Origin: Antechinus flavipes
Taxonomy: Eukaryota
Direction: 5' to 3'
Length of the DNA stretch: 64,000 nt
Assembly (NCBI RefSeq): GCF_016432865.1
Contig: NC_067399.1
Span: 628,308,001-628,372,000, forward strand
Within the stretch, counting starts at the first letter, position 1. Every line of letters starts with the position of its first letter. Made by a program: the position numbers and the translations under genes. The notes below the pieces were generated by a model. It worked only from the letters and a program-made list of their open reading frames with translations, searched no databases and had not been told where the DNA came from. Positions 5,005 through 6,783 of the stretch are shown in pieces.

Positions 5005-5078
5005 AAACACAGAGTTAGTGCCATCGAATCTTGTGAGTGGGACAGGACTCTCCTCAGGCCAGTTCGGGTATGACATGC
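5005..5078 (-). CDS. RET: RET exon 20 (RET51 tail), visible part; the rest lies in the N gap
   Basis: ..ttttcatttttAG acceptor at 5079-5080; (G)[24 protein letters not shown] then Ns. Stop expected near 4921 if the tail is as long as in human. Confidence 0.95.
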
Positions 5079-5103
5079 CTAAAAATGAAAACAGATAATT
5101 TTT

Positions 5104-5136
5104 TCTGCACTGAAGAACCAAAACTTCATGTGCAGA
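5104..5136 (-). promoter_or_regulatory. Predicted 12-bp hairpin just upstream of the exon-20 polypyrimidine tract
   Basis: UCUGCAC-A-UGAAG [UUUUGGUU] CUUCA-GUGCAGA: 7 bp, 1-nt bulge, 5 bp, 8-nt loop. Confidence 0.7.
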
Positions 5137-5161
5137 CAGTAAGGCCCTTGGCAAAACTCCC
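5134..5161 (-). promoter_or_regulatory. 3' arm of predicted long-range intron-19 RNA duplex; contains branch-point-like CUUAC (A at 5140)
   Basis: GGGAGUUUUGCCAAGGGCCUUACUGUCU is complementary to 5769-5800 (27 pairs counted by hand). Confidence 0.7.
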
Positions 5162-5768
5162 TTTGTTGTTAAAACAAAACTTGTAACTTTTGCACCAAAT
5201 ACATGGTGCATATTCTGTTTCCAGGTTTTTGATACATAAATTACATTAATGGGTAAAAAAAAAATTAAAAGTTTTCTTGATAAAATTACCTTTTAAGGAA
5301 CTACCAGCTTGGGCTTTTATAAGCTTCCCAATATCAAAACATATTTTGATAGCAGCAAAAAGGAAAACAGCATAATGCTGTCCCAAACAGGTCGTTGCAA
5401 CCAAAAGATTTTAAGATTTTTGTTTGTTGGTTGTTTTGTTTGCTTGTTTGTTTGCTTTTTTGGTGGTGGTTGTTGTTACAGAAAATACTTTAAGCCAAAA
5501 TAAGCCTACTTAGCAATCATCATGGAACCAGGTACTTCTGCTTATTCCACAAGGGATAAGGACCAAATCTCTAAGAGAAGCATGCATGCCTGCAAGATAC
5601 TACATCTAGAATCCACACTAAATCCAGTCATTTACAAATCATAGATTCAATGTCCTAAAAAATGGAAAATCCTCAATTAAGAAAAAATTCTACTTCTTTT
5701 TTTTTAAATTACAAAATTACAAGACAAAAAATATAATCTTTTGAACATCTAATCAGGAGGCAAAAAGT

Positions 5769-5800
5769 AGGAGTTTTGGCAAGAACCATATTTACTGTCC
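5769..5800 (-). promoter_or_regulatory. 5' arm of predicted long-range intron-19 RNA duplex (within RET9 3'UTR)
   Basis: GGACAGUAAAUAUGGUUCUUGCCAAAACUCCU; pairs with 5134-5161. Confidence 0.7.
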
Positions 5801-6603
5801 ATCTCACTACCACAATATGCTAGAATATTTTTCTTTCAAAATACCTGCTACAGCTTTTTATGATGGTATCATAATGCTATGTAGGAACACAAAGGATGTG
5901 AAAACAGTGGACTGCTTTTACTTTCCAGAGTTGCCATCACTGCATTATTTTTGAAGGCTCTAGGAGCAGCACTCACTTTTTTCTGCTGTCTAGACAGGCT
6001 AACTTAAATTAAGATCCCATCTCAAGTTAAGCACATATCTTTGCTCATTAAACCTCTCACTTGTATACAAGAGTAGAGATTAAGCATTTATATTGTATGA
6101 GACAAGACTGTTCAAATATATTGGGACCCATTCCCAAATTGAGCTAAATCATTTTCATTTTTTTCCCCAAAGCAAATGCTTACCAAAATCTAGTTGATTT
6201 GCCCAAGCAGTTAAATTACAGGTATATTAATCTGATATAATGTATCCCATTTTCCCACCCCATCCCCCCAAAGTGTACACTTTGATTTGTTAACCACATT
6301 TAAAACCTCCCCTGAGAATACTTCCCTGATCTATTTTTCTCTTTTTATCATATCTATTTGGTAATTTTTACTTATTTTCATATCCCTTTTCTTTTTAAAC
6401 AGAGTTGCAAAATGCCTGAAATATAAACCTAATGCAAAGTTTAACATTTACAAACAAAAAAAAAAAAAAAAAAAAAAAGCTTTCCAAGCAAACTTTGATT
6501 TCATTCAAACCAGAAACACTCTTTAAAGGGATACAGAGTGTGAGGACAGTGCAGAAGGAAAAAAAAATCAGGAGTGGGTGAATGGGTGTGTGTATGTGTG
6601 TTG

Positions 6604-6783
<180 letters not shown>

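What the first reader, a model, noticed from the sequence alone, without database searches (positions are those of the whole stretch)
5134..5800. Long-range RNA duplex in RET intron 19: candidate switch for RET9 versus RET51
Seen: on the transcript strand, 5800-5769 (GGACAGUAA-AUAU-GGUUCUUG-C-CAAAACUCCU) is complementary to 5161-5134 (GGGAGUUUUG-C-CAAGGGCC-UUACUGUCU). The duplex is 9 bp, a 4-nt bulge, 8 bp, a C:C mismatch and 10 bp: 27 pairs (4 of them G-U), closing a ~610-nt loop. The 3' arm carries the best branch-point-like motif near the exon-20 acceptor (CUUAC, A5140, 60 nt before the AG), and that A is paired. Established: RET9 arises by cleavage/polyadenylation within intron 19, and RET51 by splicing to exon 20. 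From memory, both arms are nearly invariant in human RET, where the RET9 poly(A) site lies just after the 5' arm, i.e. inside the loop. Inference: co-transcriptional pairing either masks the branch point (favouring RET9) or loops out the intronic poly(A) site (favouring RET51). I know of no description of this for RET, though it may appear in genome-wide catalogues of conserved complementary regions.
Basis: partly seen in the sequence, partly recalled or inferred. Interest (0 to 1): 0.88.

Follow-up and report, generated by a model that had tools for sequence, protein, structure and literature searches.

The report
Conserved RNA duplex in RET intron 19
Two short stretches about 600 bases apart in the last alternative intron of the RET receptor gene can pair as RNA, and this pairing has been kept from bony fish to mammals right where the cell chooses between the RET9 and RET51 protein forms, so it is a strong and testable candidate for the switch.

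Summary
RET lies on the minus strand and intron 19 is 6635-5079. Positions 5800-5769 pair with 5161-5134 exactly as described: 27 pairs, 4 of them G-U, -37.2 kcal/mol. It is the best duplex in the intron (0 of 48 shuffles reach it), but energy alone ranks it only about 15th in the 64-kb window.

Conservation is the decisive evidence. I recovered intron 19 from seven other vertebrates: a rattlesnake, an unidentified tetrapod, a rodent-like mammal and four teleost-like fish. In seven of the eight introns, the window's included, the homologous element is the best partner of the 3' arm. The two arms co-vary: five column pairs change on both sides, and same-species duplexes are about 8 kcal/mol stronger than fish/tetrapod chimeras.

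The 5' arm contains AGUAAA. A conserved ATTAAA lies about 10 nt after it in most species, and RNA-run coverage ends at about the arm.

My best reading is that pairing silences the RET9 poly(A) site and favours RET51. The direction of the effect is inferred.

No published description was found.

The parts
6636..6783 (-). RET exon 19 (DYLDLAAS...ENKLYG); last base G6636
   Evidence: Translation; 100% identical to the exon-19 part of a hornbill RET protein
6604..6635 (-). Start of intron 19, read through as the RET9 tail (RISHAFTRF, 6633-6607) plus the stop codon (6606-6604)
5079..6635 (-). Intron 19 (1557 nt), GT at 6635-6634 and AG at 5080-5079. Its 5' part, down to about the 5' arm, is the RET9 3'UTR
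   Evidence: Cross-species alignability runs from exon 19 to about 5743 and then stops.
5769..5801 (-). 5' arm: H1 5801/5800-5792, bulge 5791-5788, H2 5787-5780, mismatch C5779, H3 5778-5769
   Evidence: Near-invariant in four tetrapod sequences, and a diverged but still pairing homologue in four fish
5791..5796 (-). AGUAAA poly(A)-signal variant inside the 5' arm (H1 plus the first bulge base)
   Evidence: Present in all tetrapod sequences recovered. No AATAAA or ATTAAA occurs anywhere in this intron
5748..5753 (-). ATTAGA, the degenerate counterpart of the ATTAAA that follows the 5' arm by about 10 nt in L018, snake, rodent-like and one fish sequence
5162..5768 (-). Loop closed by the duplex (607 nt). 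Poorly conserved; the equivalent distance is about 85 to 1020 nt in other species
5133..5161 (-). 3' arm: H3 strand 5161-5152, mismatch C5151, H2 strand 5150-5143, H1 strand 5142-5133/5134
5140..5140 (-).
   Evidence: The A is absent in the snake
5104..5136 (-). Local hairpin (12 bp with one bulge) covering the three upstream AGs. It shares 4 nt (5136-5133) with the H1 strand of the 3' arm, so the two structures compete
Evidence: Read. H1 probabilities fall towards this end. The stem is kept in the rodent-like, snake and most fish sequences.
5096..5096 (-). Alternative, more canonical branch-point candidate (aUnAy, -17), followed by an AG-free pyrimidine tract
   Evidence: present at -17 in all eight species
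5005..5078 (-). Readable start of exon 20 (RET51 tail, [25 protein letters not shown]). The rest, 5004-4873, is written N and was left untouched

Best explanation
The two arms form a long-range RNA helix in the RET pre-mRNA that has been kept since before teleosts and tetrapods split. The helix joins the two competing processing sites of intron 19. Its 5' arm sits on or next to the RET9 poly(A) signal: AGUAAA lies inside helix H1, and the conserved ATTAAA lies about 10 nt downstream. Its 3' arm sits 55-80 nt upstream of the exon-20 acceptor.

Proposed mechanism (inferred):
1. Until the 3' arm is transcribed, the RET9 poly(A) site is free and can be cleaved, giving RET9.
2. The 3' arm emerges almost together with the exon-20 acceptor. 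It pairs with the 5' arm, buries or crowds the poly(A) signal and loops out the rest of the intron.
3. The transcript is then protected from intronic cleavage and is committed to exon 19-20 splicing, giving RET51.

Anything that blocks the 5' arm or speeds up cleavage would therefore raise RET9. The local hairpin that shares 4 nt with H1 could tune how much of H1, and hence of the AGUAAA, is paired.

Shown: the duplex, its conservation, the covariation of the arms, and its position relative to the poly(A) hexamers and the acceptor. Inferred: that it acts on isoform choice, and the direction of that effect.
For: - The duplex is -37.2 kcal/mol and the best in the intron, with 0 of 48 shuffles reaching it. 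H2 and H3 have p>=0.99 (terminal U-G 0.81) in a whole-intron fold.
- Orthologous introns were recovered from a rattlesnake (L021), an unidentified tetrapod (L018), a rodent-like mammal (L003, with L002 for the 5' arm only) and four teleost-like fish (L011/L012, L013, L019, L020).
- In 7 of the 8 introns examined, counting the window, the homologous CAGUAA-containing element is the best partner of the 3' arm within 2.2 kb (-33 to -46 kcal/mol). In the snake it is second by 0.5 kcal.
- Unbiased all-against-all scans rank the homologous pair first in three fish introns, with 0 of 40 shuffles each.
- In the structural alignment, 196 of 215 cells are paired. Pairs changed on both sides are G-C to A-U (snake, first pair of H2), C-G/A-U, A-U/C-G, C-G/U-A and U-G/G-C. 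Seven further pairs change on one side and still pair.
- Same-species duplexes average -38.5 kcal/mol and fish/tetrapod chimeras -30.3.
- The poly(A) hexamer travels with the 5' arm. AGUAAA is inside it in all tetrapods. ATTAAA lies 37-45 nt after the CAGUAA start in L018, snake, rodent-like sequences and fish L019, and inside the arm in fish L013.
- Cross-species alignability of the RET9 3'UTR stops 25-55 nt after the arm.
- Ten RNA runs plateau at 0.45 of the sampled words of 5620-5960, which puts the end of RNA coverage at roughly 5800-5770.
- Loop length varies from about 85 to 1020 nt, while the adjacency of the arms to the PAS and to the acceptor is kept.
- Precedent: in Drosophila Nmnat a stem is needed for distal splicing over a proximal terminal exon with a poly(A) site, shown with compensatory mutants (PMC2724269).
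Against:
- The poly(A) site of this species is located only indirectly, and its ATTAAA is degenerate (ATTAGA).
- The ATTAAA of the other species lies outside the helix, so occlusion there would have to be steric.
- In the snake, two pairs are broken and the duplex is weaker at -31 kcal/mol.
- The covariation rests on eight sequences, essentially one deep split plus one lineage, and on a hand-made alignment fitted to the structure.
- The helix also covers a perfect yUnAy motif, which is what the opposite direction of effect would predict.
- By energy alone the duplex is only about 15th in the 64-kb window.
Confidence: 0.5

Rival explanations
1. Same conserved duplex, opposite direction. Pairing hides the branch point (A5140) or otherwise hinders the exon-20 acceptor region. 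That delays exon 19-20 splicing and leaves time for intronic cleavage, so pairing would favour RET9 (or skipping to a later exon).
For: A5140 lies in a perfect yUnAy motif, pairs with U5794 (p 0.70), and the motif is kept at about -54 to -61 in 7 of 8 species.
Against: The snake has no A at that position. A candidate at -17 with an AG-free pyrimidine tract is present in all eight species and lies outside the helix. The helix would then mask the poly(A) hexamer and the branch point together, which gives no clear switch. H1 is the least stable and least conserved part: its outer pairs are missing in fish.
Confidence: 0.2
2. The duplex is real and conserved but serves something other than isoform choice. 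Examples are a double-stranded platform for an RNA-binding protein or editing enzyme, nuclear retention, or holding the two RNA halves together after intronic cleavage so that splicing can still proceed (the rescue idea of PMC8052449).
For: Conservation and covariation show only that pairing is selected. PMC8052449 reports enrichment of poly(A) sites inside conserved complementary pairs and proposes such a rescue.
Against: The arms keep their adjacency to the poly(A) hexamer and to the acceptor while the loop changes more than tenfold in length. That points to those two sites as the targets. The helix is 27 bp with a bulge and a mismatch, which is short for editing or dsRNA sensing (general knowledge).
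Confidence: 0.15
3. There is no functional pairing. Each arm is conserved for its own reason (poly(A) signal, upstream element or microRNA site on one side; acceptor-region signals on the other) and the complementarity is coincidental.
For: Both arms lie in regions expected to be conserved anyway. The last ~110 nt of the intron are 85-91% identical between this species and the rodent-like and snake sequences. Within tetrapods the arms hardly vary, so they say little. Energy alone is unremarkable at 64-kb scale.
Against: Fish arms differ from tetrapod arms at many positions yet remain each other's best partner in every fish intron. Positions changed on both sides keep pairing. Cross-clade chimeric duplexes are about 8 kcal/mol weaker.
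Confidence: 0.07

Closest known systems
Drosophila Nmnat intron-4 stem (Raker et al. 2009, PMC2724269; microRNA modulation in PMC13092977)
   Same: Two conserved complementary boxes in one intron. The choice is between a proximal terminal exon with a poly(A) site and splicing to a distal exon. The products differ in their C-termini. Pairing approximates the distal acceptor and disfavours the proximal route.
   Different: In Nmnat the boxes surround a proximal acceptor site, whereas RET9 needs no splice at all (read-through of the 5' splice site). The RET helix overlaps or abuts the poly(A) hexamer itself. Nmnat has been tested by disrupting and compensatory mutations; RET has not. The two are in insects and vertebrates and share no sequence.
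[quoted passage not shown] 2021, PMC8052449)
   Same: It is an intronic, conserved, complementary pair hundreds of nt apart with a poly(A) site in its inner part, which is exactly the class that paper describes statistically.
   Different: RET is not named in the text or in the supplementary files held. The full catalogue is a genome track that I could not search, so prior listing cannot be excluded. No RET-specific mechanism or fish-to-mammal covariation is described there.
AGO2-dependent choice of the proximal Ret poly(A) site in mouse neurons (bioRxiv 10.1101/2020.12.15.422806)
   Same: [quoted passage not shown]
   Different: That work invokes recruitment of the cleavage machinery by AGO2 and mentions no RNA duplex. 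Its reporter carries the poly(A) regions only, so the AGO2 effect does not need the 3' arm.

Membership tests
Long-range pre-mRNA structure deciding between intronic polyadenylation and splicing (Nmnat type / PCCR) | Two complementary boxes within one intron that form a stable helix | tested here: met
   -37.2 kcal/mol, best in the intron, 0 of 48 shuffles; p>=0.99 for 17 of the 18 H2/H3 pairs (the terminal U-G 0.81)
Long-range pre-mRNA structure deciding between intronic polyadenylation and splicing (Nmnat type / PCCR) | Both boxes conserved in orthologous introns of distant species | tested here: met
   Found in snake, an unidentified tetrapod, rodent-like and four teleost-like sequences
Long-range pre-mRNA structure deciding between intronic polyadenylation and splicing (Nmnat type / PCCR) | Compensatory substitutions that keep pairing | tested here: met
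   Five column pairs changed on both sides and seven on one side; cognate duplexes -38.5 against chimeric -30.3 kcal/mol. Small sample and a hand-made alignment
Long-range pre-mRNA structure deciding between intronic polyadenylation and splicing (Nmnat type / PCCR) | The competing poly(A) site lies in or at the base of the looped-out part | tested here: inconclusive
   Hexamers (AGUAAA in the arm; ATTAAA about 10 nt after it in most species) and the RNA-run word share place it there.
Long-range pre-mRNA structure deciding between intronic polyadenylation and splicing (Nmnat type / PCCR) | Disrupting and restoring the helix shifts and restores the isoform ratio | not testable with these tools
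   Needs a minigene or genome editing
Long-range pre-mRNA structure deciding between intronic polyadenylation and splicing (Nmnat type / PCCR) | Pairing seen in cells (PARIS, RIC-seq, structure probing) | not testable with these tools
   No such data within reach
Branch-point-masking helix | The branch-point adenosine that is actually used lies inside the helix, in all species that keep the helix | tested here: not met
   The proposed A is replaced in the snake. A candidate at -17 outside the helix is universal. The branch point in use is unmapped
MicroRNA obstruction of a splicing-relevant stem (MIMOSAS, PMC13092977) | A microRNA site within one strand of the stem | tested here: met
   An 8-mer match to the miR-182-5p seed lies in H2/H3 of the 5' arm in all four tetrapod sequences and in none of the fish. 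About 3% chance that some conserved microRNA fits (my estimate)
MicroRNA obstruction of a splicing-relevant stem (MIMOSAS, PMC13092977) | Argonaute/microRNA binding at that site changes the isoform ratio by opening the stem | not testable with these tools
   There is only an indirect hint: a mouse AGO2 CLIP site next to the proximal Ret PAS, and AGO2 knock-down raises Ret51

The most novel reading that the evidence does not exclude
The helix is the hub of a three-way competition that sets the RET9:RET51 ratio in tetrapods. The 5' arm can be held by the cleavage machinery, by the 3' arm, or by nuclear AGO2 loaded with miR-182 (an 8-mer site lies in H2/H3). Argonaute binding would keep the arm open and the RET9 poly(A) site usable, so loss of AGO2 or miR-182 would let the helix form and shift output to RET51. 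This would be a vertebrate, disease-gene example of microRNA obstruction of a long-range stem, built on a fish-to-mammal structural core.
Probability: 0.12. Interest if true: 0.9.

Novelty: new member of a known kind. Interest (0 to 1): 0.74.

Why it matters
RET9 and RET51 signal differently. In the mouse knock-in models, mice making only Ret9 develop normally, whereas mice making only Ret51 have kidney and enteric-nervous-system defects (reviewed in PMC3189609). RET drives Hirschsprung disease, MEN2 and several cancers. How the ratio of the two forms is set is largely unknown.

A helix of about 27 bp kept across fish, reptile and mammal sequences, joining the RET9 poly(A) site to the exon-20 acceptor, gives a concrete element to work on. 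It can be mutated, blocked with antisense oligonucleotides and screened for patient variants. It would also be one of few vertebrate cases where an intronic-polyadenylation-versus-splicing choice is tied to a specific conserved long-range structure.

Tried and rejected
- RNAduplex of the whole intron against itself gives one meaningless chained duplex, so I replaced it with window scans.
- The first shuffle run timed out and was repeated with 48 shuffles.
- Full-length RET proteins P0018 and P0009 are not on record for contig look-up.
- The frog locus has no DNA served, so amphibians are missing from the comparison.
- L001, L004-L010, L014 and L015 end before the arms.
- Two of the four metagenome pattern hits (L016, L017) are unrelated chance matches.
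The later searches used 5620-5960, 5170-6640, words only, or the miR-182 sequence. Only local scripts on sequence already held touched them.
- Rfam gives no match in 5170-6640 at E<=1.
- Literature searches linking RET9/RET51 with RNA structure found nothing relevant. PMC4734678 concerns 3'UTR variants and its text was not opened.
- Human RET was not examined and the N run in exon 20 was not filled.

Full report
**Context.** The window carries RET on its minus strand. Translating that strand gives the kinase exons and exon 19 (6783-6636, ending ...WIENKLYG). The read-through RET9 tail RISHAFTRF with its stop follows at 6633-6604. Further downstream an acceptor is followed by [25 protein letters not shown], the start of the RET51 tail. 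Intron 19 is therefore 6635-5079 (1557 nt). Exon 20 is written N from 5004 to 4873, and I left that untouched.

**The observation.**
- H1: 9 bp, 5800-5792 with 5142-5134.
- A 4-nt bulge, 5791-5788.
- H2: 8 bp, 5787-5780 with 5150-5143.
- A C:C mismatch, 5779/5151.
- H3: 10 bp, 5778-5769 with 5161-5152.

That is 27 pairs, four of them G-U, closing a 607-nt loop. RNAduplex gives -37.2 kcal/mol.

An all-against-all scan of 40-nt windows of the intron ranks this pair first, with the next at -29.0. The best duplex in 48 dinucleotide shuffles averages -28.7 (sd 1.8, minimum -33.2), so none reaches it. In an equilibrium fold of the whole intron, H2 and H3 are in the minimum-energy structure with pair probabilities of at least 0.99, except the terminal U-G at 0.81. 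H1 has 0.1-0.7. H1 is weaker because its 3' strand shares four bases with a local hairpin (5136-5104).

One caution applies. On the scale of the 64-kb window, 14 other pairs no more than 2 kb apart score as well or better. Energy alone would not single this duplex out.

**Orthologues.** No vertebrate genome collection is offered, so I used the open reading frame that covers exon 19 plus the RET9 tail as bait and fetched the contigs that encode its relatives. I also ran one pattern scan of metagenome contigs. This gave complete or nearly complete intron 19 from seven further species:
- L021: Crotalus adamanteus.
- L018: an unidentified tetrapod, about 69% identical to the window in the RET9 3'UTR.
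- L003: mammalian signatures, rodent-like. L002, a close relative, covers the 5' arm only.
- L011/L012, L013, L019 and L020: teleost signatures that match damselfish RET.

**Conservation of pairing.** In the rodent-like sequences both arms are islands of near-identity. The 5' arm differs only in the bulge and the 3' arm by one deleted G, while the flanks of the 5' arm are about 60% identical.

For each species I scanned up to 2.2 kb upstream for the best partner of its 3' arm. In seven of the eight introns, counting the window, the winner is the homologous element beginning CAGUAA, at -33 to -46 kcal/mol and well ahead of the runner-up. In the snake it is second by 0.5 kcal/mol. Unbiased all-against-all scans of three fish introns again rank the homologous pair first, with 0 of 40 shuffles reaching it in each.

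Fish arms differ from tetrapod arms at many positions and lack the 4-nt bulge, yet they still pair. In a structure-guided alignment whose rows I verified as true substrings, 196 of 215 cells are standard pairs. Five column pairs change on both sides while keeping a pair:
- G-C to A-U at the first pair of H2, in the snake.
- C-G/A-U.
- A-U/C-G.
- C-G/U-A.
- U-G/G-C.

Seven more pairs change on one side through G-U.

An alignment-free check agrees. Duplexes between the two arms of the same species average -38.5 kcal/mol, and fish/tetrapod chimeras average -30.3. The sample is small and amounts to one deep split plus one lineage. Even so, the result is hard to reconcile with two independently conserved elements.

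**Position relative to the processing signals.** Intron 19 of the window has no AATAAA or ATTAAA. AGUAAA lies inside the 5' arm (5796-5791), covering H1 and the first bulge base.
- In L018, the snake, both rodent-like sequences and fish L019, an ATTAAA begins 37-45 nt after the CAGUAA start, about 10 nt beyond the arm.
- In fish L013 the ATTAAA lies inside the arm.
- In the window the corresponding hexamer is ATTAGA, at 5753-5748.

Cross-species alignability of the RET9 3'UTR runs from exon 19 to 5743-5764 and then stops. Ten RNA runs of two related organisms all hold 0.45 of the sampled words of 5620-5960. Assuming coverage is continuous from exon 19, this puts the end of the RNA at roughly 5800-5770. 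That estimate is indirect.

Loop length ranges from about 85 to about 1020 nt, while each arm keeps its neighbour: the poly(A) hexamer on one side and the acceptor region on the other.

**The branch point.** Three points count against it:
- The snake has a U in place of that A.
- Three AGs lie between it and the acceptor.
- An aUnAy candidate at -17 (A5096), followed by an AG-free pyrimidine tract, is present in all eight species.

Which branch point is used is unknown.

**Mechanism.** I take the helix as a device that couples the RET9 poly(A) site to the exon-20 acceptor. While only the 5' arm exists, the site is open and RET9 can be made. The 3' arm appears almost together with the acceptor. 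Pairing then buries the AGUAAA, crowds the ATTAAA and protects the transcript until exon 19-20 splicing makes RET51.

This direction is inferred from the anatomy and from the tested Drosophila Nmnat precedent, where a stem is required for distal splicing over a proximal terminal exon with a poly(A) site (PMC2724269). The opposite direction, masking of the branch point, remains possible. So do other uses of a conserved helix.

**Links to the literature.** The catalogue of conserved complementary regions in human genes reports an enrichment of poly(A) sites inside such pairs (PMC8052449). It does not name RET in its text or in the supplements held.

A preprint shows that AGO2 binds next to the proximal Ret poly(A) site in mouse and that its knock-down shifts output to Ret51 (10.1101/2020.12.15.422806). 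In all four tetrapod sequences the 5' arm contains an 8-mer match to the miR-182-5p seed (sequence confirmed, match). This invites a model like the microRNA obstruction of stems described in flies (PMC13092977). That model is speculation.

Searches that combined RET9/RET51 with RNA-structure terms found no description of this duplex. Rfam has no match in 5170-6640.

**Limits.**
Local scripts on sequence already held were the only further use.
- Human RET was not examined.
- Amphibian, bird and shark sequences are missing.

**Verdict.** It is very probably functional and probably acts on the RET9/RET51 choice. It belongs to a known kind of mechanism but appears to be undescribed for RET.

Noticed in passing
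window 5136-5104 (minus strand): A local 12-bp hairpin with one bulge covers the three AGs upstream of the exon-20 acceptor. It shares 4 nt with the H1 strand of the 3' arm, so hairpin and H1 are alternatives. The stem is kept in rodent-like, snake and most fish sequences, and the rodent-like sequences show a shifted bulge with a new G-C pair.
   Followed up: partly
window 5782-5775 (minus strand); also L018, L021, L003, L002: An 8-mer match to the miR-182-5p seed lies inside H2/H3 of the 5' arm in all tetrapod sequences and is absent in the fish. A 7-mer copy sits in the 3' arm because the core is nearly palindromic. It may relate to the AGO2 site reported next to the mouse Ret proximal poly(A) site.
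   Followed up: partly
window 5753-5748 (minus strand): The ATTAAA that follows the 5' arm in the other tetrapods is ATTAGA here. In this species RET9 probably relies on the AGUAAA inside the arm, which would put the cleavage site within or just after the arm.
   Followed up: partly
L013:1213-1260: This fish intron has a second, weaker copy of the 5' arm start (10 nt complementary to the 3' arm, -28.3 kcal/mol) about 120 nt downstream of the main one. It could be a competing partner.
   Followed up: no
window 53340/52183, 60932/60659, 49648/49388, 45761/45423, 13248/13001 (minus strand, starts of 40-nt windows): Other intragenic pairs no more than 2 kb apart have duplex energies of -44 to -50 kcal/mol, stronger than the finding. 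I did not check them for repeats or conservation.
   Followed up: no
L005-L010 (contigs carrying P0002): 21 contigs of a related species all break about 120 nt after the RET9 stop at a CAAA-type low-complexity stretch. Their recorded product reads past the stop (…TRFQQHKK) and does not translate back from the DNA, which looks like a gene-calling oddity.
   Followed up: no
window 5004-4873 and 50185-50044: Two runs of N (132 and 142 nt). The first lies inside exon 20, in the RET51 tail. Both were left as they are.
   Followed up: no
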